DNA of 64,000 nt, taken from IMG/VR virus record IMGVR_UViG_3300042516_005475, positions 1 through 64,000 of that record. One strand, given 5' to 3'. The notes beneath the pieces are model-generated. The model had not been told where the DNA came from. It ran no database searches and saw nothing but the letters and a program-made list of their open reading frames with translations. Both the position numbers and the translations under genes were made by a program. How positions within the stretch are numbered: the stretch's first letter is position 1; every line of letters begins with the position of its first letter. Positions 1 through 55,741 of this stretch are shown here, one piece after another.

Positions 1-1089
1 AGCAGCACCACGGCGGTGACGAACTGCAATTCTGTTTGCTTCAACGATCAACTTCTGATAGAAGTCGCGATTACGCTCAGCCAACCAGCGACCGTCAGCA
101 GCAGAAGCTGTCCAGCTTGTTACGGAACCGTAAGAAGCATACTTCAAGCAGACTTGGATCATTCTGATGACCATTTCACGATCGATTTCAGCCTGGAGCT
201 CATAGCTCATGGCGTTTGTCAATTCAGCATCGATATCGATACCGTTCATGTTCTTCAAGTCCTGCTCCAACTCAACAGACCAACGAGCAGCTAGTCTGCG
301 GGTACCAGCTTCAACGGCTGTCTTCTCGAAGGAGATAGAAGCTGTTGGGATCTGAGAAGTGAACTCGTAGTTGGCTAGCAACTGAGCAACACCTTGATCA
401 GAATCAATAATCTGGAAGTTGGTGTTGTTTTCATATGCTGCTAATTCAGCAGAAGAAGCACCAGTGAAACGGGTGTCTAGGTATTGGTAACCAAGTTCAC
501 CAGAATAGGTACCACCGAACGTACCAGTGTTACCTGGGCTCACTACACCAGCAGCAGCAGCCTGCCATGGGTAAGGTCCAGGGTTGCCGTAGGCAGCATC
601 ATTGTACTTGCCTGGGATCTGGCTACCTAGTACGTCATTGTCGTACTTGTAACGTAGAGCGAAGGCGAGACCAACTGGACCGCTCATTGGCTGAACACCA
701 ACGATTTCGTTAGTGATCAACTCAGGGAAGGTACGGCGGATCATTGGAATGAGGATCTTTGGCAAACGAGCATCACCGGTAGCATACCAGTCAGCATTCG
801 TATCGCCAGTAGAGTTGTTTACGGCTGCACCGTAACCACCCATACCACCTACTGCACCGTATGCGCCACCGAAAGCTGATTGAGTAGATCCAGAAACGTT
901 AGCGCCGGATTCTTCAATGCACCATCTCTCTTGGTTCTCAAGAAGAATGGCAGTGTTAAGACGTGTGTGATCGTCTTCGATGTTTCTCACGTTCTTGCTG
1001 TTAAAATCAAGAACAGGTGACCACTTCTCAAGAAGAGCGCCAGCTCTATCTGGAGAAATATATGACTGTGAAGGTCTGATATTTTTCAT
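1..1089 (-). CDS. gp23: Major capsid protein, T4 gp23-like (5' part; runs off the window start)
   Basis: Not in the ORF track because it is open at the edge. Manual translation from ATG 1089 gives MKNIRPSQSYISPDRAGALLEKWSPVLD...TAILLENQE...LIPMIRRTFPELITNEIVGVQPMSGPVGLAFALRY, which are gp23 motifs. It follows the scaffold gene. Confidence 0.95.
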   Translation of the reverse strand, partial: MKNIRPSQSYISPDRAGALLEKWSPVLDFNSKNVRNIEDDHTRLNTAILLENQERWCIEESGANVSGSTQSAFGGAYGAVGGMGGYGAAVNNSTGDTNADWYATGDARLPKILIPMIRRTFPELITNEIVGVQPMSGPVGLAFALRYKYDNDVLGSQIPGKYNDAAYGNPGPYPWQAAAAGVVSPGNTGTFGGTYSGELGYQYLDTRFTGASSAELAAYENNTNFQIIDSDQGVAQLLANYEFTSQIPTASISFEKTAVEAGTRRLAARWSVELEQDLKNMNGIDIDAELTNAMSYELQAEIDREMVIRMIQVCLKYASYGSVTSWTASAADGRWLAERNRDFYQKLIVEANRIAVRHRRGAA

Positions 1090-1160
1090 ATGTTTATTTA
1101 TTTTTAGACATTATATGATGTCAAATCATAATCAGGCTTATGCCTCAATGGAAATTTATT

Positions 1161-2066
1161 TTAGTGTCTTGATAGCTCCTGCATGTACAACTTCAATGGA
1201 GGGTGATCAGAAGCTTCTGATGTACCTTCCTCGATTACCTGTTGAGTATTTTCAACTACAGGGCGATCAAGATTTCTAGAAACAGACTGTGATACAGCTT
1301 GCTCGGTTAGAGTCTCGATGTTCTTAGCTTCTTGCTTTTCAAACATCTTGCTTGTATAGTCATAGTTTTCTTTAATGAATTCAGCAGACTTACCCTTGAA
1401 TACCTTGGCCAAATATGCCTTCTTGTTATCAGATAAACCAGCTGTCTTCTGTTCAAAAATTAAATTAGAGACTGCTCTATTGTAAGATTCATTGAGCTGC
1501 TTGTTATCAGCCTTAAGAGCCTCAATGATCTTGGAGCTTTCATCAATCTTTTGCTTACCATCCAATACGGCTTCGCGAATTGATTCTTTACCGAGTACTA
1601 GATCGATAGAAAGCATGCTGCGTAGTTCGTTTAGAACTTGAGCAGAGCGTCTGTTTTGTACAGCCTCTTCAATGGCTGTCTTTGGCAAGTTCTCATCGAG
1701 GTATGACTCGAGATAGTTGGAAATTGATTCAACAAGAGATTGCTTGAATGATGCAGCATCCTCATTGAGAGCCTTCTCGTACTTGCGTACAACAGTCTTG
1801 AGTTTACCAGCATGGTTCTCGTTGATTGCTTCAACAACCTTCAAAAGCTTCTCAGAGTGATTACGGTCAATAGCCTCAACGAGCTTCTCTACCTTGGCAG
1901 AGTGATCTTCGTCGATTTGTACCAATAAACTCTCGAGTTGCAATTTTGCACGATCTTCAGCAGCCTTGTTTACTTGCTGCTCGAATGCCTCAGAAATTTG
2001 ATTTAGTGATTCCTCACTAAGAATATCCTTGGTAACTTCCTTTAATTTTTCAATTAGAGCTGACAT
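1161..2066 (-). CDS. gp22: Prohead core scaffolding protein, gp22-like
   Basis: Acidic coiled-coil protein of 301 aa with LVESISNYLESYLDE; lies between protease and MCP. Confidence 0.85.
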   Translation of the reverse strand: MSALIEKLKEVTKDILSEESLNQISEAFEQQVNKAAEDRAKLQLESLLVQIDEDHSAKVEKLVEAIDRNHSEKLLKVVEAINENHAGKLKTVVRKYEKALNEDAASFKQSLVESISNYLESYLDENLPKTAIEEAVQNRRSAQVLNELRSMLSIDLVLGKESIREAVLDGKQKIDESSKIIEALKADNKQLNESYNRAVSNLIFEQKTAGLSDNKKAYLAKVFKGKSAEFIKENYDYTSKMFEKQEAKNIETLTEQAVSQSVSRNLDRPVVENTQQVIEEGTSEASDHPPLKLYMQELSRH

Positions 2067-19660: not shown

Positions 19661-20392
19661 TTAAACCTTGAGAGCTTTATTCCACAAGACCAATTGCAAT
19701 CGAGGACTAAAGTTAAAACCATGCTTCTTGCAAACCTCTGCTACCCAAGGAGCAACAGCATTATGCTCATCTCGAGAACCACAGCAAGGCATCAACCAAA
19801 TTTGATCTTCAGTAATACTAAAAGGTTTGATATACTTTTCGATAATCTCTTCAACATCACTATCTTTCTGCACAACAAACTTAAAGTAAGAGTAGATACT
19901 AGCGTGGTAAGCAATAACCTCTGGAACGTATCTCTTCTCTTCTGGATCTCCGTTAGTAGACAACTTAGGAGACACAGTAAAAGTAGCATTTATACTTTCC
20001 CAAAAACTTGAAGGATTAATCGTACAGTTAGTTTCAAAATCAATAACAGGATAGAAATCGAACTTTCTGAAAAAGGCTTCAATAAACTCAATCAAAGCCT
20101 TTTGCTGAATAAGAGGTTCACCACCAGTAATCTTAAGAACATGATTGCCTTTCAACTTATTTAGGTAATCATTATCTTCAAAGATCTTAAAGATCTCTTC
20201 AAAGGTTAGCTTATTCTTCTTAGACCAGCTAACATAGCTATCACAACCAAACGGAGAATCAGGAGACTTAAACCCGATGCAAGTCAAGTTGCACATTGCC
20301 AATCGCATGAAGATGCTTGGCTTACCAACCAAATGACCTTCACCTTCGATAGTTTCAAAGACAAAGTCATCAGAGAGAAATAATGAACTCAT
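19661..20392 (-). CDS. queE: 7-carboxy-7-deazaguanine synthase (radical SAM)
   Basis: FETIEGEG, FMRLAMCNLTC...CDS, ITGGEP, ETN, TVSPK, SPRLQ. Confidence 0.9.
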   Translation of the reverse strand: MSSLFLSDDFVFETIEGEGHLVGKPSIFMRLAMCNLTCIGFKSPDSPFGCDSYVSWSKKNKLTFEEIFKIFEDNDYLNKLKGNHVLKITGGEPLIQQKALIEFIEAFFRKFDFYPVIDFETNCTINPSSFWESINATFTVSPKLSTNGDPEEKRYVPEVIAYHASIYSYFKFVVQKDSDVEEIIEKYIKPFSITEDQIWLMPCCGSRDEHNAVAPWVAEVCKKHGFNFSPRLQLVLWNKALKV

Positions 20393-20422
20393 AATTTAAT
20401 GATATAGGAATCACTCTTAAGT

Positions 20423-21118
20423 TCAAGCCCATTTAGTACCAAAGTCCCAGGTACTAGGACGATTCTTACCACCGACTGGAACCCCTTGCGGAGGAGCATC
20501 AGTCTGCTTAGGGGTAACCCTAACTGGTTTATTTGTGTCATAAGCCAAGGCTTCAGTCTGCTTTTCAGACTTAGCAGGCGGAGCCCAGACAGGTTCAGCA
20601 GTCTTACCCTTCTTGCCTTTGCCTTTAGCAGGCGCAGCCTCAGCTTCATCAGCAACTTCTGCTGTAGATTCTTGAGCAGTTTCAGCAGAATAAATAGCAG
20701 AGTTCTTCTCATGCTCAAACACCTCAACAGAATGAGCTCGAACTCGACCGCTAGTCTTATGCTTCACGTAGCTATCTGCAGCATTAAAGCAATACTTTGC
20801 AAACAACTCAATTCCAACCCCTTCATCCATAACAACGATTGAGGCAGCTCCAGCCTTTTCAAGAGCCTCAAACTCTTTCATAGCAGGGTCATTCTTAGCA
20901 AGAACGAGAGTATGATCAAACTTCTCCTGCAAGAATCCCTTCAATTCGTCAAAGTCTCCGAAGTCAACAACCCAATTGTTGCCGTCAAGAGAATCAGAAG
21001 TAAACGTAAATTTACCAACCAATCGATAACCATGAATGAATCTGCAATGGGACTTTGCATTAGGCTGACGAAATGCAGCACTTCCGAGTTCAATAACCTT
21101 CGTGGAATAATATCTCAT
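20423..21118 (-). CDS. queD: 6-carboxy-tetrahydropterin synthase with a low-complexity C-terminal extension
   Basis: SHCRFIHGY, WVVDFG, FDHT, EHEKNSA; start trimmed to MRYYSTK. Confidence 0.85.
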   Translation of the reverse strand: MRYYSTKVIELGSAAFRQPNAKSHCRFIHGYRLVGKFTFTSDSLDGNNWVVDFGDFDELKGFLQEKFDHTLVLAKNDPAMKEFEALEKAGAASIVVMDEGVGIELFAKYCFNAADSYVKHKTSGRVRAHSVEVFEHEKNSAIYSAETAQESTAEVADEAEAAPAKGKGKKGKTAEPVWAPPAKSEKQTEALAYDTNKPVRVTPKQTDAPPQGVPVGGKNRPSTWDFGTKWA

Positions 21119-21157
21119 ACTCAGATATGTTATGAACATTTTTCCTAGAATCAAGCC

Positions 21158-21185
21158 TTGACTTGAACGAATTTGTCTCTATAAT
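21158..21185 (+). promoter_or_regulatory. Sigma70-type promoter of folE
   Basis: TTGACT-N16-TATAAT, with ATG 6 nt downstream. Confidence 0.7.
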
Positions 21186-21191
21186 AGGCGT

Positions 21192-21848
21192 ATGAATGAT
21201 GAGATTAGAGAGAAAGATTACCTCCTCCCGACTGCTAACAGTTCTATGGCTTTGACAGAAGAGCAAAAGCTTGCTATTATCGACAAGGGTGCTAAGGCAT
21301 ATGAGACTTTTTTGGATGCTCTTCGCATTGACTGGCGTAATGATCCGAATAGCGCAGGTACTCCTCGACGTGTTGCAAAGTCGTACGTGTTTGATTTAAT
21401 CTCTGGGTGCTATGAGGCTCCGCCGAAGATTACTTCTTTTCCTGCTGATGGTTATGATGGCATCGTCTCTCAGACGAATATTCCGTTGACTAGTATGTGT
21501 AGCCATCACCATTTGGCCTTTACTGGATTGGTGCATGTTGCTTATATTCCTAGTCTTGAAGGTCGTGTTATTGGCTTGAGTAAGCTCAATCGTATTGTTG
21601 AGTTTTATGGTCGTCGACCTCAGATTCAAGAAGGTTTGACGATGCAGATTCATAAGGCTATTAACGAGGTCTGCGAGCATAACAAGGGTGTTGCAGTTGT
21701 TGTTAAGGCTCAGCATACTTGTGCTTGTAATCGAGGTGTGAGACATCAAGGTTGTTATATGGTTACATCTAAGCTGTCTGGAGACTTCTATGATGACGAG
21801 AAGACTCGCAAGGAGTTTTACGACTTTATTAAAATGGCTGAAGAGTAG
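21192..21848 (+). CDS. folE: GTP cyclohydrolase I
   Basis: TPRRVAK, SMCSHH, GLSKLNRIV, RPQIQE, HTCACNRGV. Confidence 0.95.
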   Translation: MNDEIREKDYLLPTANSSMALTEEQKLAIIDKGAKAYETFLDALRIDWRNDPNSAGTPRRVAKSYVFDLISGCYEAPPKITSFPADGYDGIVSQTNIPLTSMCSHHHLAFTGLVHVAYIPSLEGRVIGLSKLNRIVEFYGRRPQIQEGLTMQIHKAINEVCEHNKGVAVVVKAQHTCACNRGVRHQGCYMVTSKLSGDFYDDEKTRKEFYDFIKMAEE

Positions 21849-21880
21849 TCTTTCTACCTGGCTGCAGTAAATAATACTGT

Positions 21881-22417
21881 ATGTCAGGCGCATTTGAACA
21901 TAAAATTTTAACTGTTAGTCAGTCAAAGCAAGCCGGTCTTCTTGGCCCAGCGAAAATCGCTGCTAGTAAACCCGATACAGGTGTTACTATAGTCAAGAAG
22001 TCGGCTTATTTTGTTATTAGGGATTGTGCAAAAATTACTGAAAAGTATCTCGTACACCATGTTTGGGGTGAAATTAAAAACCCCATTGATAGGCTCGAAG
22101 GAGCATTTACCAGAGCTGAAATTGAAGATTTCTTATCTAGAGCCAAAAGAGATACTGAAACACAGCAATTGTGTTCTGTAATTCTAGAAGACATTCATAA
22201 GAAGAATAAGCTTGAAAATACAGGCATTGTATCTCCTGTAGCTGATGCTCCGGTAGTTAAATTTGACTTTACCGAATTTGAGAATGATAAGATTTATGGT
22301 GATTATGATACTGGCGCTCCACAAGCAGACGTTGTAGAAATTCCAACTGGGGTGTTACCAGAAAAAGAAAAGTCAACTTATGAGCTATTTCTTGAAGCCT
22401 TTAAACCTAAGTTATAA
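21881..22417 (+). CDS. Hypothetical late protein upstream of the tubulin gene
   Basis: ORF preceded by TAAATA. Confidence 0.6.
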   Translation: MSGAFEHKILTVSQSKQAGLLGPAKIAASKPDTGVTIVKKSAYFVIRDCAKITEKYLVHHVWGEIKNPIDRLEGAFTRAEIEDFLSRAKRDTETQQLCSVILEDIHKKNKLENTGIVSPVADAPVVKFDFTEFENDKIYGDYDTGAPQADVVEIPTGVLPEKEKSTYELFLEAFKPKL

Positions 22418-37543: not shown

Positions 37544-37579
37544 AAGGGCAACGATATAAAACTTGTTGCCCTTAATTTT
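37544..37579 (+). terminator. Hairpin, probable terminator after uvsX, overlapping the queC -35 box
   Basis: aagggcaacga...ttgttgccctt followed by aatttt. Confidence 0.5.
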
Positions 37580-37594: not shown

Positions 37595-37600
37595 GTGTGT

Positions 37601-38311
37601 ATGAGTAAGTGTGTAATTCCTGTTAGTGGTGGCATTGATTCAACGGTCATGCTTTATGATGCTGCTGCATCTAAGACCTATTCAGATATCTTCGCGATTA
37701 GTTTTTATTACGGTCAGCGTCATGCTACGAATGAGCTGGCTTGTGCAACTAAATCTGTTAATACTTTAAAGGAAAAGTACCCAGAGATTAATATCTATCA
37801 CCGAAACATTGATCTAAGCTTCTTTGGTGAGATTGCTATTAGCTCTTCAATTACCAATAATGATATTGCTGTTGCTCAGACTAAAGATGTTCTTGGTGAT
37901 CCACAGCCGGTTAATTATGTACCGTTTCGTAATCTAATGATGCTTTCTATTCTCTGCTCTTTTGCAGAGGCTCATGGTGCTCGAGATGTTTACTATGGTA
38001 GTGCTCTTGTTGATTCTCAGGCTGGGTATTGGGACTCTAGTAATGAATTCTACTTGAATCTCGCTTCTGTTATTGGTCTCAATCGTAAGAATAAGATTTC
38101 TATTATTACACCGTTGATTAAGCTTGATAAGAAAGATATTATCAAGTTAGGTGATGAGCGTGGGGTTGACTTTAAGAGTACCTGGACTTGTTATGAAGGT
38201 AAAGAACAAGCCTGTGGATATTGTCCAGCCTGCTCTAGTCGAATCAAAGGCTTTATGGATTATATGATGGTTGACCCTATTGAATACAGCCGAAAGATTA
38301 AATTTATCTAA
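37601..38311 (+). CDS. queC: 7-cyano-7-deazaguanine synthase
   Basis: SGGIDS, YGQRH, YVPFRN, TWTCY...CGYCPAC. Confidence 0.95.
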   Translation: MSKCVIPVSGGIDSTVMLYDAAASKTYSDIFAISFYYGQRHATNELACATKSVNTLKEKYPEINIYHRNIDLSFFGEIAISSSITNNDIAVAQTKDVLGDPQPVNYVPFRNLMMLSILCSFAEAHGARDVYYGSALVDSQAGYWDSSNEFYLNLASVIGLNRKNKISIITPLIKLDKKDIIKLGDERGVDFKSTWTCYEGKEQACGYCPACSSRIKGFMDYMMVDPIEYSRKIKFI

Positions 38312-38312
38312 T

Positions 38313-38963
38313 ATGTGTGCAATATTTGGTTCTGCTTCTAAAGAAAAATTTGTTAAACTATACGAGTTAAATAAACCTAGAGGTGTATCTGCTTCCAGTT
38401 ATTTAACTATAACTGATAATGGTTGGATTGATTGTTACAAGAGCGCTGGTGCATTTGATGAAAATAGATTAAAATCTAGTAAGTTATATCTTGGTCATTG
38501 CCAGGCTCCAACCACAGTTAATCAGAGCTTTAACCCTGAACTAGCTCACCCATTTTATTGGAATCGCTTTTATGTCGCTCACAATGGTATTATTACCAAT
38601 GTAGAAGAGCTTTGTGAAAAGTACTTTATTAAGCTTGAAGATATTAAAGTTGACTCTAGTATCATACCTGCTTTGATAGGTTACTTCTATCATAAAAAGA
38701 ACTCTGACCAACTTCAAGACATTATTAAGCGTGTTGCTGAGTTGCTCAAAGGTACTTTTGCTTGTTATATTGTAGATGAAAGATCTAATCGAATATTTCT
38801 TATTCGATCAGGTTCTACCTTGTTCTATGATCAAGATAGCAATATCTCCTCTACTAAGTTTGATAATGCTATTCCTTTTGAAGAAGGTAGGGTAGGTGAA
38901 ATTGTTAAAAACAAGATTATATATCACAATACCTTTATTTGTAACTCCCCATTTTTTATATGA
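38313..38963 (+). CDS. Class II (Ntn) glutamine amidotransferase
   Basis: M-C-AIFG start (Cys1 nucleophile), GHCQAPT, AHPF, HNGII, VDS. Confidence 0.8.
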   Translation: MCAIFGSASKEKFVKLYELNKPRGVSASSYLTITDNGWIDCYKSAGAFDENRLKSSKLYLGHCQAPTTVNQSFNPELAHPFYWNRFYVAHNGIITNVEELCEKYFIKLEDIKVDSSIIPALIGYFYHKKNSDQLQDIIKRVAELLKGTFACYIVDERSNRIFLIRSGSTLFYDQDSNISSTKFDNAIPFEEGRVGEIVKNKIIYHNTFICNSPFFI

Positions 38964-39694
38964 AAATTTTATTTTATACTTGTACTAAACAGAACGTAGA
39001 TGCATTTCTTAAGTTCTCTCCATTAATTAAATGTCTTGGTCTTGGCAACGATTTGCCTTACAAGCCTAAGAAAGCCTCTCTTAATGAACCTCTCGAACTC
39101 AATTACAAGTTTAAGAATCTTCGTTATGGTGCTGATCTGATTGTTTGGACTGAAAATACTGATAGTCTCAGTGTTCAGTATAACAAGGCTAAGAAGTATT
39201 ATGATCAATACGATGCTATTATATTCTTGCACGATGATGTGTTTATTACTGATGCCTTCTTAATTGAGAAGCTCCAGGTAGCCTTTGCACAATTTGACGT
39301 TGTTGGATTGGCAGGTGGAGCTGATATTAGTCTTAAGAGCTATGGCTTGTGGCATATGATGTGTGATCCAAAGACCTTTAGTGGTGCAGTTTCACATTTT
39401 GATAATTCTGGAAAAGAGTTTGTTACAGCCTTTGGACCGTTTGGCAAGCGTTGTTTGCTTTTAGATGGTTTGTTCTTGGCTGTAAACACTAAGACAGCTA
39501 AGGCTGTTAATTGGGACGAAAATGTAAAGTTCCACCATTACGACTTGCTATTCTGCTTGGAAGCTAATAAACTCAAGCTGAAGCTAGGTACTGCTCCTAT
39601 TTACGTGACTCATGAATCTCCTGGATTAAAAGGATTTAGTGAGGAATTTAAGAAGAGTGATGCTTACTTCAAAGAATACTTTAACAAATACTAA
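38960..39694 (+). CDS. GT-A-fold glycosyltransferase-like protein
   Basis: SLSVQYN, FLHDDV, VVGLAG, LDGLFLA, WDE..FHHYD, HESPG. Confidence 0.75.
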   Translation: MKILFYTCTKQNVDAFLKFSPLIKCLGLGNDLPYKPKKASLNEPLELNYKFKNLRYGADLIVWTENTDSLSVQYNKAKKYYDQYDAIIFLHDDVFITDAFLIEKLQVAFAQFDVVGLAGGADISLKSYGLWHMMCDPKTFSGAVSHFDNSGKEFVTAFGPFGKRCLLLDGLFLAVNTKTAKAVNWDENVKFHHYDLLFCLEANKLKLKLGTAPIYVTHESPGLKGFSEEFKKSDAYFKEYFNKY

Positions 39695-41046
39695 TGGAAA
39701 AGAAATCAAAAACGAGCAAGATAGATAGCGACTTTTTTGAGTACGTTATTCTATTTAACTGTCTGACTGATGAGACCTACATGGGTACAGTTGTAGAGTA
39801 CTTGAAGCCAGATCTCTTTAATAGTAAAGATGTTCAGAACATCGTAGAGATTATTAAAGAATACTTTAACAAGCGTTCTAATGTACCTACTCTTACTGAA
39901 GTTAAGACTTATCTTGTAACTGATGAGCTAAAAAACTCTTTCAAGCGTCTTGTTGAGCAATTCAAGACGCTTGAAAAGTCTAATAACAAGCAAGAGCTTC
40001 TTGAGAATACTGAAAGGTTTATTAAAGAGAAGACTGTATTTAATACAATGCTTGAAGTCACTGATATGTGTACTAAGGCAGAAGTTATTGATACAAATAT
40101 CGTCTTGGATAAGTTCGAGCATGCATGTTCTATCTCGCTTAATAATGAGAAGGGTCACGACTACTTTGCTGATATTGATAAGCATTGTAAAGATCTAGTC
40201 AAGGTTGATAATCATATTAAGACAGGTTGGGAATGGCTCGATAAGAAGCTTGGTGGTGGATTCTTGCAAGATGGTAGAGCAATCTATGTCTTCGCAGGCG
40301 AAACTAACGTAGGTAAGAGTATCTTTTTGCAGAACCTGGCTGTTAATATTGCGAATCAGAATAAGAGTGTTATTATCTTGTCTCTTGAAATGTCTGAGAT
40401 GGCTTACTGTAAACGTATTTCATCTAACATTACTCAGATTCCATTTAATGACTTGCGTAATAATGTTGATAGTCTAAAGCAGACTGTTACTAATAAGAAA
40501 CTTAATCTACCGAGCTCTCGATTGCTTGTTAAAGAGTTTCCACCTAATACTGTTACTCCAGGTCAGATGACTGCATTCATTAAGAAGCTGCAACAGTCTG
40601 GGTATAAGTTCGATGCTATTGTTATTGACTATTTGAATCTACTTAATGCCCCAAAAGGGGATAACTCTTATGAGCGAATTAAGTATACTGCTGAGCAAGT
40701 TCGTGCAATGAGCTATGTTTTTAATTGTCCAATTATTACAGCAACTCAGTTGAATCGCAGTGGTTACAATCAAGAGAATCCTGGACTAGAGTCTATTAGT
40801 GAAAGTATTGGTACTGCTGCTACTGCTGATTGTGTGATGGGTCTATGGCAGCTCGATGAAGATAAAGAGCTCGGTGTTATTAAAATGAGTTTGTTGAAGA
40901 ACCGTTATGGTCCTAACTTCGGTACAATCAACATGAAAATTAACTACCCAACTCTTACTCTTGAAGAGGATAACACATTGAATGCAGATGAAGAGATCGT
41001 AAATACCTCAGAAGCGCTCAAAGCGTTATCTGAAGAAATGACATGA
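39694..41046 (+). CDS. gp41: Replicative DnaB-like helicase, gp41
   Basis: GETNVGKS, SLEMSE, KEFP, IDYLNL, TATQLNRSG, ISES, KNRYG. Confidence 0.93.
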   Translation: MEKKSKTSKIDSDFFEYVILFNCLTDETYMGTVVEYLKPDLFNSKDVQNIVEIIKEYFNKRSNVPTLTEVKTYLVTDELKNSFKRLVEQFKTLEKSNNKQELLENTERFIKEKTVFNTMLEVTDMCTKAEVIDTNIVLDKFEHACSISLNNEKGHDYFADIDKHCKDLVKVDNHIKTGWEWLDKKLGGGFLQDGRAIYVFAGETNVGKSIFLQNLAVNIANQNKSVIILSLEMSEMAYCKRISSNITQIPFNDLRNNVDSLKQTVTNKKLNLPSSRLLVKEFPPNTVTPGQMTAFIKKLQQSGYKFDAIVIDYLNLLNAPKGDNSYERIKYTAEQVRAMSYVFNCPIITATQLNRSGYNQENPGLESISESIGTAATADCVMGLWQLDEDKELGVIKMSLLKNRYGPNFGTINMKINYPTLTLEEDNTLNADEEIVNTSEALKALSEEMT

Positions 41047-41948
41047 AAAACGAACTGCTAATTATTAATCAAGATTTAGACGGAGCTGGCTGTTACACTG
41101 CTTACAGCTGGTTTCATAAAGACGCACCTGAAGTATTTTTTGTAACGCAAAAGAAGGCTGAAAGTATGATCAAAGGTTTCTTTGATCGTCATTCTTTGCC
41201 TGACTTTAAACGAATCACTGTTCTCGGTCTAGATGTTTCTGGATTCGAAGACTTTCTTGACTGTAAAAATGTAATTATTATTACAGCTCATAAGAAGATG
41301 GTTGAGCTAAAGTACAACTTTAAGCTCGCAACTGCCTTAACTAAGATTGATGGTTCATCTACTCGATTAACCTTTAATATTTTTAAGAAGTTATACCCTG
41401 ATATTAAGCCAACAGAGCATCAAAAGCTTTTGGTTGTTTTAATTGATGATGCAGTTAGTAAGACATATGCACTAAAACAATCTAAACAACTTGAGACGTT
41501 GTATTGGAACTCAAAGTCTTTCGAAAGAGTCTTTAACTTCTATCAAGACTTTCGCAAAGGCTTCTTTCAATTCAATGACTATCAATTGAGACAAATCGAA
41601 TACTTTCAAAAGAAGTGCGATACTATTATCGACTCTCTAGCATTGTATCATACTAATTTACCTGTTAAGAATAAAAAGTATAATTTTTATGCTACATTTG
41701 CTGAAGGCTGTTTTCAGGAAGTAGCTGACTATATTTTTAACGAATATAGCGCTGATGTTGTTGCAGTAGTTAGCCTAGAGGCTGGCAAGGTATATTTTAG
41801 ACGTAGCAAAGTTTGTGATGTTAAGGTAAATAACCTGGCTAAGACTCTCTGTGATGGTGACGGCTATGAATATGCCGCTAGTGGTAGCCTAACAGATAAG
41901 TTTGTAGAATTTACAAAGCTGTTAAAGCGCCATAAAAGTCAAATATGA
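41043..41948 (+). CDS. DHH/DHHA1-fold protein with degenerate catalytic motifs
   Basis: NQDLDGAGC (motif I), LGLD, TAHK in place of DHH, GDGYEYAASG in place of GGGH..AAG. Confidence 0.6.
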   Translation: MKNELLIINQDLDGAGCYTAYSWFHKDAPEVFFVTQKKAESMIKGFFDRHSLPDFKRITVLGLDVSGFEDFLDCKNVIIITAHKKMVELKYNFKLATALTKIDGSSTRLTFNIFKKLYPDIKPTEHQKLLVVLIDDAVSKTYALKQSKQLETLYWNSKSFERVFNFYQDFRKGFFQFNDYQLRQIEYFQKKCDTIIDSLALYHTNLPVKNKKYNFYATFAEGCFQEVADYIFNEYSADVVAVVSLEAGKVYFRRSKVCDVKVNNLAKTLCDGDGYEYAASGSLTDKFVEFTKLLKRHKSQI

Positions 41949-42238
41949 TTCAACCATACGATAGCATATGTTCAATTGAGACTAGAAATAACTTCTATAG
42001 AGCCTGCTCTTTTGTGTGCATGCTTAAAAATAAACGATTGAACTATGCTAACATTCTTATTATACTTCTTCAAGAGAAAAAACTAATCAGACTTTTTAAG
42101 AATCTTTGTAGCTTTGAAAACGATTTTGAGTGCATTAGATTCTTTTTAGAGTGTGATCCTAATATTTACAAGTCTAAATACATAAAACGATTCCTTAAAA
42201 AGCACTATGATAACGTCTACAGAAAAGAGAATATATAA
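41945..42238 (+). CDS. Hypothetical protein (position of gp33, similarity weak)
   Basis: 97-aa ORF before the gp59-like and gp32 genes. Confidence 0.5.
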   Translation: MIQPYDSICSIETRNNFYRACSFVCMLKNKRLNYANILIILLQEKKLIRLFKNLCSFENDFECIRFFLECDPNIYKSKYIKRFLKKHYDNVYRKENI

Positions 42239-42860
42239 TACTTTTCTAGCCATATCACGCAAAAAGCAAAACAAGCCATTTAAATTACGTCAAGATTTCG
42301 AGAACTTTGAACAGGATGAAAAGTACCCTGCTATTAAAAAGCTCGCTTACTTCTTTGAACGTTTTCCGAATATTGATATCAACGATTATTTCTTGGCTCC
42401 GTATTCCATTTACGTAAACGATGAGAATACCTATTACGATCTTCAGTTTTATTTGAGCCAAAAGGCTCGTTCTGTGTATACTATGCACATGAAGAAGAAA
42501 GAAAACGTAGAGGCTGATTCAGAAGAAAATTTGAAAAAATGCAAAGAATCTCTGCTGTTTATCTATAAATATTGTAAAGACCAAGGCTGCTCTGTAGAAG
42601 AGTATTTGAATCTTAAAGAGGAGAATTCACTCTTGCCTGCCTTTGCTGTTCATTTAAAAAATAGAGACATTAACGTCTACGCGTTATTTGCCTTTGAAGA
42701 CTTTGAGAATAAATTCTTTCAGATTCCTGCGGATTTGCTTGAATTCATCTTTGGGAGTCTGTATAATGATTTCGCACAACTTAGACGGAAATTTGTGATG
42801 TCTGAGAAGTGCAAACAGATCTGTAGATCAGGTCTGAAAATAATAGAAACAAAAAGCTAG
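42207..42860 (+). CDS. Probable helicase loader, gp59-like
   Basis: 217 aa, directly upstream of gp32; RIYNTFLAI...KYPAIKKLAYFF loosely resembles the gp59 N-terminus. Confidence 0.5.
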   Translation: MITSTEKRIYNTFLAISRKKQNKPFKLRQDFENFEQDEKYPAIKKLAYFFERFPNIDINDYFLAPYSIYVNDENTYYDLQFYLSQKARSVYTMHMKKKENVEADSEENLKKCKESLLFIYKYCKDQGCSVEEYLNLKEENSLLPAFAVHLKNRDINVYALFAFEDFENKFFQIPADLLEFIFGSLYNDFAQLRRKFVMSEKCKQICRSGLKIIETKS

Positions 42861-42896: not shown

Positions 42897-43781
42897 ATGA
42901 GTACATTTAATAAATCAATGTTTGAGTCGATTAAGGAAGAGTTGAACAAGTCCAAGGCTAAGTCCGGTCTTCGTGATATTCTTCGTACACCTCCTGGTCA
43001 TACTTACACTGTGAGGCTTATTCCCAACATCCAGGATCCTAAGAAGACCTTTTTCCATTACTACAACTTTGGTTGGGAGTCTTATGCTACTGGTGAGTAT
43101 GTTCAGTTTATCTCTCCTTCTACTTGGGGTGAGCGCGATCCGATTGCTGAAGGTCGTTTGAAGTGCTTGAAGCATGGTTCTGCTGAAGATAAGGCAAAGG
43201 CTGAGAAGCTCTTGCGTCGCGAAAATTGGTTGGTTAACGTTTATGTTATCAACGATACCAATGAACCTGATAATAACGGCAAGGTGAAGATGCTCCGTTA
43301 TGGTCGTCAGATTCAGAAGATCATTGACGAGGCTATGAACGGTGAAGATTCAGATCAGTTCGGTGCTCGTATCTTTGACTTGAGTGGTACTGGTTGCTCG
43401 TTCAAGATCAAGGCTGAAAAGCAAGGCGACTTCCCGACGTTTGTCTCTTCTCGATTCTCATCTCCTGGTGAGGTGCCAGCTCTTGGTAGCGATAACAAGA
43501 AGATTGAGGCTATTTATAACTCAGTCCATGCCCTCGATACTGTGTTCCGTGTTCAGTCTTACGATGAGCTCAAGGCTGCTTTCGAGAAGCATTTCTTGTG
43601 TGAGACTCCTGCAGCTCCTGCTCCTAAGGCTGAGGCTGCTACTGATGATAGTCCGTTCGTTGAGTCTAAGAAGTCTGCTGTTCGTACGTTGCCTAAGCCA
43701 GTTGAGCCTGAGGCTGCGGATGAGGATGAAGATGGATTGGATGATGCTAAGGTTGCTGAACTTCTCAAGGGTTTGAGTTAA
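42897..43781 (+). CDS. gp32: Single-stranded DNA-binding protein, gp32-like
   Basis: VRLIP, GERDPI, NVYVIND..PDNNGKVK..YG, IFD...G, acidic tail. Confidence 0.9.
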   Translation: MSTFNKSMFESIKEELNKSKAKSGLRDILRTPPGHTYTVRLIPNIQDPKKTFFHYYNFGWESYATGEYVQFISPSTWGERDPIAEGRLKCLKHGSAEDKAKAEKLLRRENWLVNVYVINDTNEPDNNGKVKMLRYGRQIQKIIDEAMNGEDSDQFGARIFDLSGTGCSFKIKAEKQGDFPTFVSSRFSSPGEVPALGSDNKKIEAIYNSVHALDTVFRVQSYDELKAAFEKHFLCETPAAPAPKAEAATDDSPFVESKKSAVRTLPKPVEPEAADEDEDGLDDAKVAELLKGLS

Positions 43782-43798
43782 GATAGTTAGTTGTTGCG

Positions 43799-43831
43799 AC
43801 GGCAGAGCTCAAAAGGCTCTGCCGTTTTTTT
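43799..43831 (+). terminator. Rho-independent terminator after gp32
   Basis: acggcagagc-loop-gctctgccgt followed by a T run. Confidence 0.85.
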
Positions 43832-43865
43832 GTGGCTATCTCTAATCAATCTCATAAAATATTGT

Positions 43866-44429
43866 ATGAACAATCAGGATGAACCAATCGATCAAGAAGC
43901 TATTTATGCTATTGCACACTTAGCTGGGCAGGCAGCTAGTGAGCTTAAGGCTCTAGATAAACTAGCGCTTGGTTCTAGTCCTAACATGAAAGGATTACAA
44001 TTTGAACCTCAAGAACTTATTCGCCAGAATTTTTTACCAAGGATGCAGGCTAATGGAGCTCCTCCTGCATCCGCAAACCCTAATTATCGCATGCGTGCAC
44101 CAGCTCCTCGACCACCATTCCAGCCACCTCAACATCAACACCCACCACAGCAAATGATGCAACCACCCCCTCAGCAAATGATGCACCCTCAACCAGCGCA
44201 ACAGGCCCCTCAAGTCTTTGCTGGGGTAGCTCCTAATATTTCAGAAGCTCAGATTTCATTGTTGATGGAGAAGTTGCTTAGAGTTGAGCGTTTGCTTGAT
44301 TCTTGTGTTAGTGGTCAAGAACGTCTGCAAACAACTCTTGATAAGAGCTTGGAAAAGTTGTTGCAAAAGAAAATGAAAGACATTAAAATTACGTTCAAAG
44401 ATGACAATACCGATTCACAACAAGAATGA
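43866..44429 (+). CDS. Hypothetical Pro/Gln-rich protein with C-terminal coiled coil
   Basis: Start trimmed to MNNQDE, downstream of the terminator; PPQQMMQPPPQQMM tract. Confidence 0.65.
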   Translation: MNNQDEPIDQEAIYAIAHLAGQAASELKALDKLALGSSPNMKGLQFEPQELIRQNFLPRMQANGAPPASANPNYRMRAPAPRPPFQPPQHQHPPQQMMQPPPQQMMHPQPAQQAPQVFAGVAPNISEAQISLLMEKLLRVERLLDSCVSGQERLQTTLDKSLEKLLQKKMKDIKITFKDDNTDSQQE

Positions 44430-52978: not shown

Positions 52979-55741
52979 ATGCCAGCCGAAGAAAATTACT
53001 ACTTAGGTAATAAAAATCTCCCCAAACCAGACACACAGTTCGATTGGACTCCGGAAATGCTCGAGCATTTGGAGAGAAGCCGTGATGATATTTTATATTT
53101 TGCCCAAACGTTCTTCTTTATTATCAACCTAGATAAAGGTAAACAGCTAATTAAACTGCATCCTTGTCAATTAAGAGTGCTAAAAACACTAGATGATGAG
53201 AGATTCGTATCTTTGCTAGCCTCCCGTCAATCTGGTAAAGCTTTAGCGCTTGATACACCTATACCTACCCCTAATGGTTGGACTACTATGGGTGATTTAA
53301 AGGCTGGGGATAAAGTTTATAGTAGTTCAGGACAACCTTGTAATGTTGTTATGGCTCATGAAATTCTTCATAATAGAAATTGTTATGAAGTTGAATTTGA
53401 TAACGGGGAAAAAATCGTTGCAGATGAAGAGCATTTATGGTTCACTCAATCAAGAACCGAACGAAGCAAAGATATTAGTGGTTCTGTAAAAAATACTAAA
53501 CAGCTTTTTGAGACGCTAACCTCCGGTAACAAAAAGAAAGAACCTAATCACAGAATACAAGTAAATGTAAATGGTGTTTGTGGAGAACACAAAGATTTAT
53601 TAATCGATCCTTATGTTCTTGGTTTATGGTTAGGTGATGGTAGTTCTAACTCCTCAGTTATTACTGTTGGTAAGAGAGACATTCACGATTTAATTGATAT
53701 ATTAAATACTCAGCACAAGCAATTTAATAAGATTATTTTAAATGAGTATAATAAAAGTGTATATAGTTTAAGATTGACTGTTGAAGATAAGGTTAAGACT
53801 AAATGTTTAAGCACCCTTTTAAATATAGCGAATTTAAAAGATAATAAACATATACCTGCAGAATATTTGTTAGCTAGCAGAGCACAGCGTTTAGAGTTAT
53901 TAAAGGGTCTTATAGATTCAGATGGTTATATTGATTCGAGAGGCAATGCTAACTTTTACAATACAAACATTGATTTGGTTAAACAGGTAAAGAAGTTAGT
54001 TGAAAGCTTAGGCTACAAGGTAACCTTTAAAACTTTTATACCAAAATTAAAAGGGGTAGAGTGTAAGGAATGTGGTGTTCTGTATTTTAAGCCTATAGAA
54101 TATGTTTGTAAACTAGCGTTTAAAAAAAATAGAATAAAAATTAAAGAGGATATTAATGATTCTAAGCTTAGAAATCAGTGGCATTACATAAAAAATATTA
54201 AATCTATTGACTCTGTTCCAGTAAGATGTATAACAGTCGATAGTGTTGATAGTTTATACTTGTGTGGAAATCAGTATATACCCACTCATAACACGACTCT
54301 AATGACAATCTATGCTCTTTGGATTGCATGCTTCAACAAGGATAAGAGGGTACTTGTTGTAGCAAACAAAGAGAAGACAGCGATTAACATCTTTCGTCGT
54401 ATCCGCACAGCCTATGAGATGTTACCGAACTACTTAAAACCGGGTGTTAAAGAGTATGGTAAAACATCTATAACCCTAGAAAATGATTCATCAATTGGTA
54501 TTTCGACTACAAGTTCAGATGCTGGTCGTGGTGATTCCGTAAACGTTCTAATCCTGGATGAGTTAGCATTCATTCCAAATAACATTGTTGATAAGTTCTG
54601 GAAATCAGTATACCCAATTATTTCTTCATCCAAACAATCTAAGATCTTCGTTGCTTCTACTCCTAATGGTACGAAGAATTTATTCTATGATTTGTATTCT
54701 GGAGCCATGGAGGGTAAGAACGGTTGGGCAGCAGAGCGCATTGATTGGTGGGAAATACCTGGTAGAGATGAAGTTTGGAAGCAAAATACAATCAGAGAGA
54801 TTGGTAGTGAAGAAACTTTCAATCAAGAGTTCGGCAACGAATTTATTGAAGTTGGAGAGAGTACTCTTTCAGACAAATTATACGAATTTCTTAAATCAAA
54901 TGTAGCTCCACCTTTGCATATATTCGATGACGGAGCATATAAGATGTGGGAGAATCCAAACAAGGCTAGCCTGTATGTTATAGGTGTAGATGTCGCTGAG
55001 GGTGTAGGTCAGAATGCTAGCTCAATAGAAGTATTTGACATTACAGATTTAGGAAACATTAGACAAGTAGCAGAGTATTGCAACAATAATATCAATCCCT
55101 ACACGTTCACTCAAAAGATCAATCAGATATGTAAGCATTGGGGTTCTCCTCCGGTTTTGATTGAGCGTAATAATCATGGTGGTGGTGTTTGTGATAACCT
55201 TAAAAACGAATACAACTACACGAAGATTGTAACCTATACCGTAAAAGCTGGCAAGCTACATTTTGACAGACCTGGTATTCATTCTCATACAAACACCAAG
55301 TACAAGTGTATGACCAATATGAGATATTGGTTGAATGAAACAATGAGAGTTAAGATTAAATCTGTTGATTTGCTCAACGAATTAAAGAGCTTCACCCGTA
55401 ACAAGAACGGTACTTGGAGTGCTAGATCTGGTGAGTTAGATGACAGAGTAATGGGTATGGCTTGGGCCTTAATTATTCTAGACAGAGAAGTTTGTGAGAA
55501 GTATTTTGAAGTTTTAGAGTTCGATAAGAATCAAAAACCATTCAAAATTAGGAGATTAAGCTATTCTCAACCAGGAGAGTTTGTTGATGATTTTGGCATA
55601 TTAACTAATAGAAAGATTGCTCAAAATGATGGAGAAGAAGACTTTAACGAAATGCCTTCTTTCTTTACTAACTTTGGTAATGAGCCAGAAAATCCAGAAA
55701 TGGATGATTTAATTTCACAAGGATGGGAGCGTTGGGGATAA
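52979..55741 (+). CDS. gp17: Terminase large subunit, gp17-like, containing an intein
   Basis: ASRQSGK|TT Walker A, ILDELAF, STPNG, FNQEF, GVDVAEG, IERNN, DDRVM. Confidence 0.95.
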   Translation: MPAEENYYLGNKNLPKPDTQFDWTPEMLEHLERSRDDILYFAQTFFFIINLDKGKQLIKLHPCQLRVLKTLDDERFVSLLASRQSGKALALDTPIPTPNGWTTMGDLKAGDKVYSSSGQPCNVVMAHEILHNRNCYEVEFDNGEKIVADEEHLWFTQSRTERSKDISGSVKNTKQLFETLTSGNKKKEPNHRIQVNVNGVCGEHKDLLIDPYVLGLWLGDGSSNSSVITVGKRDIHDLIDILNTQHKQFNKIILNEYNKSVYSLRLTVEDKVKTKCLSTLLNIANLKDNKHIPAEYLLASRAQRLELLKGLIDSDGYIDSRGNANFYNTNIDLVKQVKKLVESLGYKVTFKTFIPKLKGVECKECGVLYFKPIEYVCKLAFKKNRIKIKEDINDSKLRNQWHYIKNIKSIDSVPVRCITVDSVDSLYLCGNQYIPTHNTTLMTIYALWIACFNKDKRVLVVANKEKTAINIFRRIRTAYEMLPNYLKPGVKEYGKTSITLENDSSIGISTTSSDAGRGDSVNVLILDELAFIPNNIVDKFWKSVYPIISSSKQSKIFVASTPNGTKNLFYDLYSGAMEGKNGWAAERIDWWEIPGRDEVWKQNTIREIGSEETFNQEFGNEFIEVGESTLSDKLYEFLKSNVAPPLHIFDDGAYKMWENPNKASLYVIGVDVAEGVGQNASSIEVFDITDLGNIRQVAEYCNNNINPYTFTQKINQICKHWGSPPVLIERNNHGGGVCDNLKNEYNYTKIVTYTVKAGKLHFDRPGIHSHTNTKYKCMTNMRYWLNETMRVKIKSVDLLNELKSFTRNKNGTWSARSGELDDRVMGMAWALIILDREVCEKYFEVLEFDKNQKPFKIRRLSYSQPGEFVDDFGILTNRKIAQNDGEEDFNEMPSFFTNFGNEPENPEMDDLISQGWERWG
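53240..54292 (+). mobile_element. Intein (351 aa) with LAGLIDADG homing endonuclease; class 3 signature
   Basis: Begins ALALDTPIPTP and ends PVRCITV...PTHN before Thr; contains LGLWLGDG and LKGLIDSDG motifs. Confidence 0.9.

What the first reader, a model, noticed from the sequence alone, without database searches (positions are those of the whole stretch)
41043..41948. Catalytically degenerate DHH protein coupled to the replicative helicase (Cdc45/RecJ-like analogy)
The protein keeps a DHH/DHHA1 layout (DLDG near the N-terminus; C-terminal FRRS...GDG...AASG) but lacks the DHH triad (TAHK) and the GGGH histidine. It overlaps gp41 by ATGA and precedes the gp59-like and gp32 genes. Known: eukaryotic Cdc45 is an inactivated DHH/RecJ protein that serves as a helicase cofactor. 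Inference: this phage may have convergently recruited a dead DHH protein as a replisome factor, or as a binder that sequesters cyclic or oligonucleotide signals.
Basis: partly seen in the sequence, partly recalled or inferred. Interest (0 to 1): 0.6.

Follow-up and report, generated by a model that had tools for sequence, protein, structure and literature searches.

The report
Degenerate DHH protein beside phage helicase
A phage gene next to the replicative helicase encodes a DHH/DHHA1-fold protein that has lost key metal-binding residues yet is strongly conserved. It is one of many independent decays, truncations or deletions of this gene in related phages, so it is probably a binding protein rather than an enzyme, and it cannot be an obligatory helicase partner.

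Summary

The order helicase, DHH, ~97-aa ORF, gp59-like, gp32 recurs in all loci of an uncultivated T4-like clade found through the DHH protein. On helicase-based trees the window's clade lies among lineages with intact motifs. The gene is under purifying selection (dN/dS 0.04-0.10), and the eight pocket positions tested are invariant within the clade (P = 2e-4).

In 104 unique helicase-anchored loci the slot is canonical in 50, degenerate or eroded in 27, cut to DHHA1 alone in 6 and absent in 21. Two >=90%-complete relatives have no DHH gene at all, so it is not an obligatory Cdc45-like cofactor.

Best reading: a pseudoenzyme that still binds a phosphate-bearing ligand (short oligonucleotide or ssDNA end) in the primosome operon. 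Binding to the helicase is untested, because the complex prediction gave no verdict. Residual or altered catalysis remains a serious rival.

The parts
39694..41046 (+). gp41/DnaB-like replicative helicase (450 aa). Its stop overlaps the start of the DHH gene (ATGA).
   Evidence: PF03796 DnaB_C E 1e-30; phrog_19 E 4e-79; junction sequence
41043..41948 (+). The finding: a 301-aa DHH/DHHA1-fold protein with a remodelled, probably non-hydrolytic, active site
   Evidence: dN/dS 0.04-0.10
41067..41084 (+). Motif I region N9-Q-D11-L-D13-G14. D11 and D13 are kept; position 9 is N where canonical orthologs have D or H.
   Evidence: Alignments; D11 and D13 invariant
41226..41234 (+). Motif II position G62, where canonical orthologs have Asp (the bridging metal ligand, NrnA D80). 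D64 follows two residues later.
   Evidence: ligand roles from PMC5593865
41283..41291 (+). Motif III T81-A82-H83 in place of D-H-H. The first His (ligand of metal M1) is lost; the second His (contacts substrate phosphate) is kept.
41445..41456 (+). Motif IV D135-D136 kept, followed by A137-V138 where canonical orthologs have Y-D
41799..41804 (+). R253-R254 on the DHHA1 strand, aligned to an Arg (of RANGN) in H. pylori 6mtz by the PDB profile match; assigned to NrnA's phosphate-binding RxRxR strand by motif similarity only. Invariant in the window's clade; R253 is invariant in the 35-sequence alignment A2 of full-length orthologs.
41856..41867 (+). G272-D273-G274-Y275 in place of GGGH. The His that contacts the substrate backbone is replaced by Tyr, and a new acidic residue sits in the loop.
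41901..41927 (+). C-terminal helix F-x-x-F-T-K-L-L-K, conserved in full-length orthologs and partly (FTK/FTT) in the DHHA1-only truncated versions
41945..42238 (+). Conserved 97-aa ORF of unknown function. It is translationally coupled to the DHH gene. In relatives that lack DHH, the 308-544 nt helicase-to-O217 gap (in 24 of 25 such loci) is of a size to hold it; its presence there was not tested directly.
   Evidence: dN/dS 0.03-0.05
42207..42860 (+). 217-aa gp59-like helicase-loader candidate
42897..43781 (+). gp32 single-stranded-DNA-binding protein
   Evidence: PF08804 E 1e-16; phrog_224 E 5e-39
43798..43826 (+). Terminator-like hairpin (12-bp stem, then a T run) just after gp32, at the likely end of the operon

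Best explanation
The gene encodes a pseudoenzyme. It descends from an NrnB/RecJ-core-like DHH-DHHA1 phosphoesterase that is a frequent but dispensable passenger of the helicase / gp59-like / gp32 primosome operon in a large uncultivated T4-like phage clade.

In the window's lineage the two-metal centre has been dismantled. The bridging motif II Asp, the Asp and first His of the DHH triad, and the D/H at position 9 are replaced. The GGGH His is now Tyr. The residues that contact substrate phosphates are frozen: the second His (H83) and R253/R254. So are the remaining acidic residues D11, D13, D64 and D136.

The most likely mode of action is binding without hydrolysis. The ligand would be a phosphate-bearing nucleic-acid species at the fork: a short RNA primer or nanoRNA, or a 5' ssDNA end. 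The protein is made in step with the helicase through ATGA translational coupling.

Shown: fold, motif states, derived status, purifying selection, pocket constraint, synteny, and dispensability in relatives.
Inferred: loss of hydrolysis, the nature of the ligand, and any contact with helicase, loader or gp32.
For: Fold:
- pLDDT 90.6.
- Foldseek hits to NrnA, PggH, GdpP and RecJ at E 1e-12 to 1e-8.
- Best viral match is the phage AR9 NrnB-like protein, TM 0.72.

Residue roles in NrnA are from PMC5593865: M1 is held by H103, D26, D80 and D156; H104 and H284 contact the substrate. A T. maritima D80N/D154N protein is deposited as inactive (entry 5o7f).

Derived state:
- The window's clade is a single branch with 100 SH-aLRT support. 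It is nested among canonical lineages on the DHH tree, the helicase+O217 tree and the 104-locus helicase tree.
- Its DHH stem branch is 1.14 substitutions per site, against 0.41 for helicase+O217.
- A relative-rate excess of 20% is seen only in DHH.
- Eight of the ten clade-specific fixed switches lie in or next to the motifs.

Selection:
- dN/dS is 0.04-0.10, against 0.02-0.05 for the helicase and 0.07-0.13 for gp32.
- All 8 pocket positions are invariant in 16 unique clade sequences of 52-100% identity, where 36% of all positions are invariant (hypergeometric P = 2e-4).

Convergence:
- A second lineage (L132, L147, L154, L162) lost other M1 ligands (D13->H, first His->S/T/G, motif IV Asp->S/G). 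It kept the second His, RR and GGGH, and has dN/dS 0.07-0.12.
- DHHA1-only versions persist in a further lineage.

Context:
- The order helicase, DHH, gp59-like, gp32 (the small ORF detectable in about half) holds in every locus of the DHH-anchored sample that spans these genes.
- There is no second DHH or DHHA1 gene in the 230-kb genome.
Against: - Loss of activity is inferred from residues only. The NrnA H103A mutant keeps residual activity. D64 and the new D273 could supply replacement carboxylates.
- An invariant pocket fits an altered enzyme as well as a binder.
- No ligand was identified and no protein partner was shown. The complex prediction gave no verdict.
- The gene is missing from 21 of 104 related loci and from two >=90%-complete genomes. 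Any replication role is therefore accessory.
- dS is near saturation for many pairs, so the dN/dS values are rough.
Confidence: 0.45

Rival explanations
1. It is still an active phosphoesterase with a remodelled site. For example, a one-metal or alternative-ligand centre could use D11, D13, D64, D136 and the new D273, with H83 and Y275 at the phosphate. Substrate or metal preference may have changed.
For: - All remaining and replacement pocket residues are invariant within the clade.
- The switches are concentrated at the pocket rather than scattered.
- G273->D adds a carboxylate facing the active site, and D64 is kept.
- NrnA H103A keeps residual activity.
- Purifying selection is as strong as in canonical orthologs.
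Against: - The bridging motif II Asp, the first His, the Asp of the triad and the position-9 ligand are all replaced, by Gly, Ala, Thr and Asn. These are poor or impossible metal ligands.
- Mutation of the motif II and IV Asp residues alone gives the protein deposited as inactive for T. maritima PDE (entry 5o7f).
- Other lineages of the same family lose different ligands, lose the whole DHH domain, or lose the gene. Catalysis is therefore repeatedly dispensable.
Confidence: 0.25
2. It is a strict Cdc45/GAN-like structural cofactor. The protein docks on the gp41-like hexamer (or on the gp59-like loader) and helps load or activate it, and the old pocket is irrelevant.
For: - Translational coupling to the helicase.
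- Constant position between the helicase and the gp59-like gene.
- Top structural matches include archaeal RecJ-Cdc45 and eukaryotic Cdc45.
- 27 of 35 orthologs give weak hits to NCBIfam RecJ_archaeal.
- Precedent: a nuclease turned into a scaffold in Cdc45 (PMC5484177; PMC3307487).
Against: - No interaction evidence was obtained (one search is no verdict, so it counts neither way).
- Related phages with about 50%-identical helicases lack the gene entirely, including genomes rated 91% and 100% complete.
- The helicase C-terminal tail does not differ with DHH state.
- The pocket is under constraint, which is unexpected for a pure scaffold.
- The protein lacks the insertion and extra domains that Cdc45 and GAN have. 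It is 301 aa, with 268 residues aligned to a 444-aa chain.
Confidence: 0.12
3. It is a counter-defence decoy or sponge. The dead DHH protein sequesters cyclic or linear oligonucleotide immune signals (CBASS or type III CRISPR) or nanoRNA, and its place in the replication operon only provides early expression.
For: - Phage DHH proteins have been proposed to counter nucleotide second messengers (PMC7824862).
- The patchy distribution, with repeated loss, truncation and remodelling, is typical of conflict genes.
- The phosphate-binding residues are kept.
Against: - The gene never leaves the helicase / gp59-like / gp32 slot in any of the 160 sampled loci that carries it.
- Purifying selection is strong, and no diversifying pattern was seen.
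- Half of the orthologs look like ordinary hydrolases.
- No defence-related neighbours were found.
Confidence: 0.1
4. It is a decaying gene without function, on its way to the deletion seen in related phages.
For: The same slot is empty in 21 of 104 related loci and truncated in 6.
Against: - The frame is intact in all 16 unique clade members down to 52% identity.
- dN/dS is 0.04-0.10.
- The motif positions are invariant.
- The ATGA coupling is conserved on both sides.
Confidence: 0.03

Closest known systems
Stand-alone DHH-DHHA1 nanoRNases and pAp phosphatases (NrnB, NrnA, H. pylori 6mtz, M. thermolithotrophicus PAP phosphatase)
   Same: - Same two-domain architecture and size (about 300 aa).
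- The best sequence-profile hit among solved structures is 6mtz (E 4.7e-9).
- The best viral structural match is the AR9 NrnB-like protein.
- Canonical orthologs in sister phages carry every motif.
   Different: The window protein lacks the motif II Asp, the Asp and first His of the DHH triad, and the GGGH His. It fails the DHH-plus-GGGH criterion used to define NrnB (PMC12709177), and it scores below Pfam thresholds on its own.
Archaeal RecJ/GAN and eukaryotic Cdc45
   Same: - Genetic linkage to a replicative helicase.
- A history in which an active nuclease gave rise to an inactive derivative, as proposed for GAN -> Cdc45.
   Different: - The helicase is DnaB/gp41-type, not MCM, and there is no GINS.
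- The insertion and extra domains are missing.
- The gene is not universal in its clade; it is absent from complete relatives.
- Binding to the helicase has not been shown.
- The pocket residues are still constrained.
Other phage DHH phosphoesterases (PHROG 4771 and 1850; Bacillus phages AR9, Nachito, Bobb; jumbo phages)
   Same: Same fold. 29 of 35 orthologs hit PHROG 4771.
   Different: Those carry canonical motifs and sit in other contexts. In Nachito the gene lies next to a triphosphate tunnel metalloenzyme and a sigma factor, not a helicase. In the literature they are read as counter-signalling phosphodiesterases.
T4 primosome (gp41, gp59, gp32, gp61)
   Same: The operon holds gp41-like, gp59-like and gp32 genes. 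The primase, clamp, RNase H/FEN, UvsX, gp46/47 and gp43 genes lie nearby.
   Different: To my knowledge T4 itself has no DHH protein and no counterpart of the 97-aa ORF in this module (background knowledge, not tested here).

Membership tests
DHH/DHHA1 phosphoesterase superfamily (fold and descent) | Two-domain DHH + DHHA1 fold | tested here: met
   [not shown]
DHH/DHHA1 phosphoesterase superfamily (fold and descent) | Sequence homology to members that reach Pfam PF01368 / PF02272 | tested here: met
   Orthologs at 29-34% identity carry both domains. The window protein itself has no Pfam hit at E <= 0.01.
Catalytically competent DHH enzyme | Motif I DxD | tested here: met
   D11 and D13 are invariant. 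The upstream ligand position 9 is Asn instead of Asp/His.
Catalytically competent DHH enzyme | Motif II Asp (bridging metal ligand) | tested here: not met
   G62 in all 16 clade members; Asp in canonical orthologs
Catalytically competent DHH enzyme | Motif III Asp-His-His | tested here: not met
   T81-A82-H83; only the second His is kept
Catalytically competent DHH enzyme | Motif IV Asp | tested here: met
   D135-D136 are invariant within the clade
Catalytically competent DHH enzyme | DHHA1 GGGH motif | tested here: not met
   G-D/E-G-Y
Catalytically competent DHH enzyme | Metal-dependent hydrolysis of a phosphoester substrate | not testable with these tools
   Needs a biochemical assay
Cdc45/GAN-type helicase cofactor | Stable physical association with the replicative helicase complex | tested here: inconclusive
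   Only one complex prediction was possible and it gave no verdict. Gene linkage and ATGA coupling are not binding evidence.
Cdc45/GAN-type helicase cofactor | Constant co-occurrence with the helicase across the lineage | tested here: not met
   Absent from 21 of 104 unique helicase-anchored loci, with at least 5 independent losses, and from genomes rated 91% and 100% complete
Cdc45/GAN-type helicase cofactor | Additional domains beyond the DHH/DHHA1 core (the matched Cdc45/GAN chains are 444-568 aa) | tested here: not met
   301 aa, filled end to end by the DHH and DHHA1 domains
NrnB (COG2404) nanoRNase | Both the DHH and GGGH signatures, as required in PMC12709177 | tested here: not met
   One search gives the criterion; searches give the motif states. 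Canonical sister orthologs would pass on the motifs.

The most novel reading that the evidence does not exclude
In this uncultivated T4-like clade a fork-associated DHH nuclease has been converted repeatedly and independently into a non-catalytic primosome subunit. The conversions took different routes: dismantling metal site M1 in at least two ways, or keeping the DHHA1 domain alone. This would replay the GAN -> Cdc45 transition, but on a DnaB-family helicase. The window protein would be a nucleic-acid-holding accessory of the gp41 / gp59-like / gp32 machinery.
Probability: 0.15. Interest if true: 0.8.

Novelty: new variant of a known kind. Interest (0 to 1): 0.5.

Why it matters
DHH proteins at replication forks are known from archaea (an active nuclease, GAN) and eukaryotes (the inactive Cdc45). 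Why a nuclease fold sits beside the helicase is still debated.

This phage clade offers a natural series in one gene slot beside a DnaB-type helicase: intact enzyme, two or more independent types of active-site dismantling, DHHA1-only stubs, and clean deletions. The series makes the question testable. One can ask what the fold does at a fork when it no longer cuts.

The result also warns annotators. Such genes would otherwise be labelled 'hypothetical' or 'DHH phosphoesterase' without regard to motif state. If the protein turns out to be an ordinary altered enzyme or an accessory binder, the value is mainly in annotation and evolution.

Tried and rejected
- Direct Pfam, PHROG and NCBIfam scans of the window protein gave nothing significant. 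Homology had to be reached through orthologs and structure.
- Complex prediction on helicase + DHH with 35-row alignments scored 0.30 and 0.29 against a mark of 0.32. That is no verdict, and I use it neither for nor against binding.
- The only cultured-phage hit by tblastn, Bacillus phage Nachito, has its DHH gene beside a triphosphate tunnel metalloenzyme and a sigma factor, not a helicase. The helicase linkage therefore does not generalise.
- The gp59-like ORF has no tblastn hit in phages and no PDB or Pfam hit by profile. Only the fold comparison points to gp59.
- The search for related loci with the gp59-like alignment failed for lack of a conserved stretch. I used the helicase alignment instead.
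- I looked for a helicase C-terminal feature that tracks DHH presence or state and found none.
- I looked for a second, intact DHH or DHHA1 gene in the 230-kb genome and found none.
- My first tree labelling used the wrong triad columns. This was corrected.
- The first, DHH-anchored sample was drawn with patterns that include the motif III region. It overstated how universal the gene is. The helicase-anchored sample corrected this.
- The large representative-protein search was not run.
Full report
**1. The gene and its setting**

The window belongs to a 230,047-bp IMG/VR virus record rated 100% complete. The ORF at 41043-41948 (+) encodes 301 aa. The stop of the upstream gene and the start of this one share ATGA at 41043-41046. 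Its own stop shares ATGA with the start of a 97-aa ORF at 41945-41948.

- The upstream gene (39694-41046) is a gp41/DnaB-like helicase: DnaB_C E 1e-30, phrog_19 E 4e-79.
- Downstream come the 97-aa ORF, a 217-aa ORF (42207-42860), and gp32 (42897-43781; PF08804 E 1e-16).
- A strong terminator-like hairpin follows at 43798-43826.
- Around this block lie UvsW-like helicase, gp55-like sigma, gp47/gp46, a family-B polymerase, UvsX, QueC, an amidotransferase, glycosyltransferases, a clamp, a 5'-3' exonuclease and a primase.
- This is a T4-like replication region. No cultured phage is close: the best helicase identity is 31% and the best polymerase identity is 33%.

**2. Is it a DHH protein?**

On its own the protein hits nothing in Pfam, and PHROG 4771 'DHH phosphoesterase' only at E 0.08. 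The word search found seven close relatives (54-91% identity, no Pfam domains) and four at 29-34% identity that carry PF01368 and/or PF02272.

- An AF2 model built on these relatives is confident: pLDDT 90.6, pTM 0.79.
- Foldseek matches it to nanoRNases, PggH, GdpP, PAP phosphatase, RecJ and archaeal RecJ/Cdc45 at E 4e-12 to 1e-7.
- Its best viral match is the NrnB-like protein of phage AR9, TM 0.72.
- A 35-sequence profile finds 6mtz best among solved structures (E 4.7e-9), then PAP phosphatase and archaeal RecJs.
- 27 of 35 orthologs give weak NCBIfam hits to RecJ_archaeal, and 29 of 35 hit PHROG 4771.

The fold and descent are settled. The nearest subfamily is a short NrnB / RecJ-core type.

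**3. Motif states**

Aligned to orthologs, the canonical pattern is D/H9-x-D11-x-D13-G, a motif II Asp after the second strand, IIDHH, DDYDS, R-R/K and GGGH. The window protein has:

| Position | Window protein | Canonical |
|---|---|---|
| 9 | N9 | D or H |
| Motif I | D11, D13 | same |
| Motif II | G62 (D64 two residues later) | Asp |
| Motif III | T81-A82-H83 | D-H-H |
| Motif IV region | D135-D136-A-V | D-D-Y-D |
| DHHA1 strand | R253-R254 | R-R/K |
| GGGH loop | G-D-G-Y | G-G-G-H |

In B. subtilis NrnA, metal M1 is held by the first His, D26, the bidentate motif II Asp and the motif IV Asp. M2 is held by D24 and H20. The second His and the GGGH His contact the substrate backbone (PMC5593865). 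By that map the window protein has lost the bridging Asp, the M1 His and the H20-equivalent. It keeps the phosphate-contacting His and the Arg pair. A T. maritima enzyme with only the motif II and IV Asp residues changed is deposited as inactive. NrnA H103A, however, keeps some activity. Inactivity is thus a strong inference, not a fact.

**4. Derived, selected, and constrained at the pocket**

- On the DHH tree the window's clade is one branch (100 SH-aLRT) with a stem of 1.14 substitutions per site.
- On a helicase + gp59-like tree, which is independent of DHH, the clade sits deep among canonical lineages with a stem of 0.41.
- Measured against a distant group, its DHH has 20% more change than neighbouring canonical lineages. 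Its helicase (ratio 1.01) and gp59-like gene (0.93) show no excess.
- Ten positions are fixed in the clade for a residue that differs from the one held by >=80% of canonical orthologs. Eight of them lie in or next to the motifs.
- Within the clade, dN/dS is 0.04-0.10. The helicase gives 0.02-0.05 and gp32 gives 0.07-0.13 for the same pairs.
- Sixteen unique clade sequences (52-100% identity) have 36% invariant positions. All eight positions equivalent to NrnA's active-site and substrate contacts are invariant (P = 2e-4).
- The genome has no second DHH or DHHA1 gene.

The gene is functional, and its remodelled pocket is itself under selection.

**5. The wider family changes the picture**

A DHH-anchored scan of viral contigs returned 80 loci. 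Every locus that spans these genes has the order helicase, DHH, gp59-like, gp32, and the small ORF between DHH and gp59-like is detectable in about half of them. Of 55 unique full-length orthologs, 39 are fully canonical. That scan used motif-containing patterns, so I repeated it anchored on the helicase.

Among 80 loci with helicases >=49% identical to the window's, the slot after the helicase holds:

| State of the slot | Loci |
|---|---|
| Canonical DHH | 25 |
| DHH with an altered triad | 16 |
| Triad intact, another motif eroded | 7 |
| DHHA1-only ORF (about 145 aa) | 6 |
| Cut by the contig end | 1 |
| No DHH gene | 25 |

In the loci without DHH, the gap between the helicase and the gp59-like gene is 308-544 nt in 24 of 25 (1011 nt in L130), enough for the small ORF alone.

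On a helicase tree of 104 unique loci the minimum numbers of independent changes are 6 for absence (5 forced by well-supported branches), 6 for triad loss, 5 for erosion and 2 for truncation. Two relatives rated 91% and 100% complete, the latter with terminal repeats, have no DHH homolog anywhere.

A second degenerate lineage (L132, L147, L154, L162) removed other M1 ligands: D13->H, first His->S/T/G, and motif IV Asp->S/G. It kept the second His, RR and GGGH, with dN/dS 0.07-0.12. Canonical pairs of similar divergence give 0.07-0.13. The less saturated truncated pair gives about 0.2, and dS is near saturation for many pairs. The truncated forms keep the DHHA1 core and part of the C-terminal FTK helix but not GGGH.

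**6. What this means**

- Hydrolysis is repeatedly dispensable in this gene, and the gene itself is dispensable in many relatives.
- That rules out an obligatory Cdc45-like role for the clade as a whole.
- Non-catalytic versions are nevertheless kept under selection in at least three lineages, and two of them converge on destroying metal site M1 while sparing the phosphate contacts.
- The simplest reading is that the protein also has a binding function. The ligand would be a phosphate-bearing nucleic-acid species, or a partner reached through DHHA1. The window's lineage has specialised in this function.
- Given the operon (helicase, loader-like protein, SSB, with primase and RNase H nearby), I favour short primers or nanoRNA, or a 5' ssDNA end, as the ligand. 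This step is inference.

The rivals, in order of weight, are:
1. An altered enzyme, with D64 and D273 as substitute ligands.
2. A true helicase-bound scaffold.
3. A sponge for nucleotide signals, the usual reading of phage DHH proteins (PMC7824862).
4. A decaying gene, which the selection data contradict.

The single complex prediction allowed (helicase + DHH) ended without a verdict and is not used. The helicase C-terminal tail does not vary with DHH state.

**7. The gp59-like neighbour**

**8. Novelty**

- Full-text searches found no description of a DHH protein in a T4-like primosome operon.
- Inactive DHH relatives at forks are known (Cdc45). Phage DHH proteins are known but uncharacterised.
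- I therefore class this as a new variant of a known kind. The recurrent, multi-route pseudoenzyme formation is the most interesting part.

Noticed in passing
window 52979-55741 (+): The large terminase subunit (920 aa) carries LAGLIDADG / Hom_end homing-endonuclease matches at about residues 303-365, between regions that match large-terminase families (phrog_15 before it; Pfam Terminase_6N from residue 439 after it). This suggests an intein or an inserted homing endonuclease.
   Followed up: no
window 37595-39694 (+): QueC (E 1e-53), a class-II glutamine amidotransferase and a glycosyltransferase sit directly upstream of the helicase. No terminator-like site was found on the + strand between the hairpin at 37544-37573 and the helicase. 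Related loci carry QueF, GTP cyclohydrolase I or a dGTP diphosphohydrolase domain instead. This points to 7-deazaguanine-type DNA modification genes interleaved with the replisome genes.
   Followed up: partly
window 41945-42238 (+): A Cys-rich 97-aa ORF with no family match. It is detectable in about half of the related loci. It is under strong purifying selection (dN/dS about 0.03-0.05). Where the DHH gene is deleted, the remaining 308-544 nt gap (24 of 25 loci) is of a size to hold it, though its presence there was not tested directly. It may be the more constant partner of the helicase and loader.
   Followed up: partly
L111, L140, L145, L150, L156, L167 (ORFs just downstream of the helicase, e.g. 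L111:4561-4998): Stand-alone DHHA1-domain ORFs of 143-152 aa replace the full DHH gene in one sub-lineage. The GGGH loop is rewritten (GECx/GDCx, with an insertion). dN/dS is about 0.2 for the less saturated pair.
   Followed up: partly
window 43791-44429 (+): A 212-aa ORF between gp32 and the clamp, with a long Pro/Gln-rich low-complexity centre and no family match. The terminator-like hairpin after gp32 lies inside its first codons if the TTG start is used, so the true start is probably further downstream.
   Followed up: no
L130 (between the helicase end at 4544 and the gp59-like start at 5555): This DHH-less relative has a 1011-nt gap instead of the usual 310-540 nt. A different gene may occupy the slot.
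   Followed up: no
window 1-2000 and 20001-22000: Local G+C of 0.45 and 0.42 against about 0.35 for the rest of the window. The cause was not examined.
   Followed up: no
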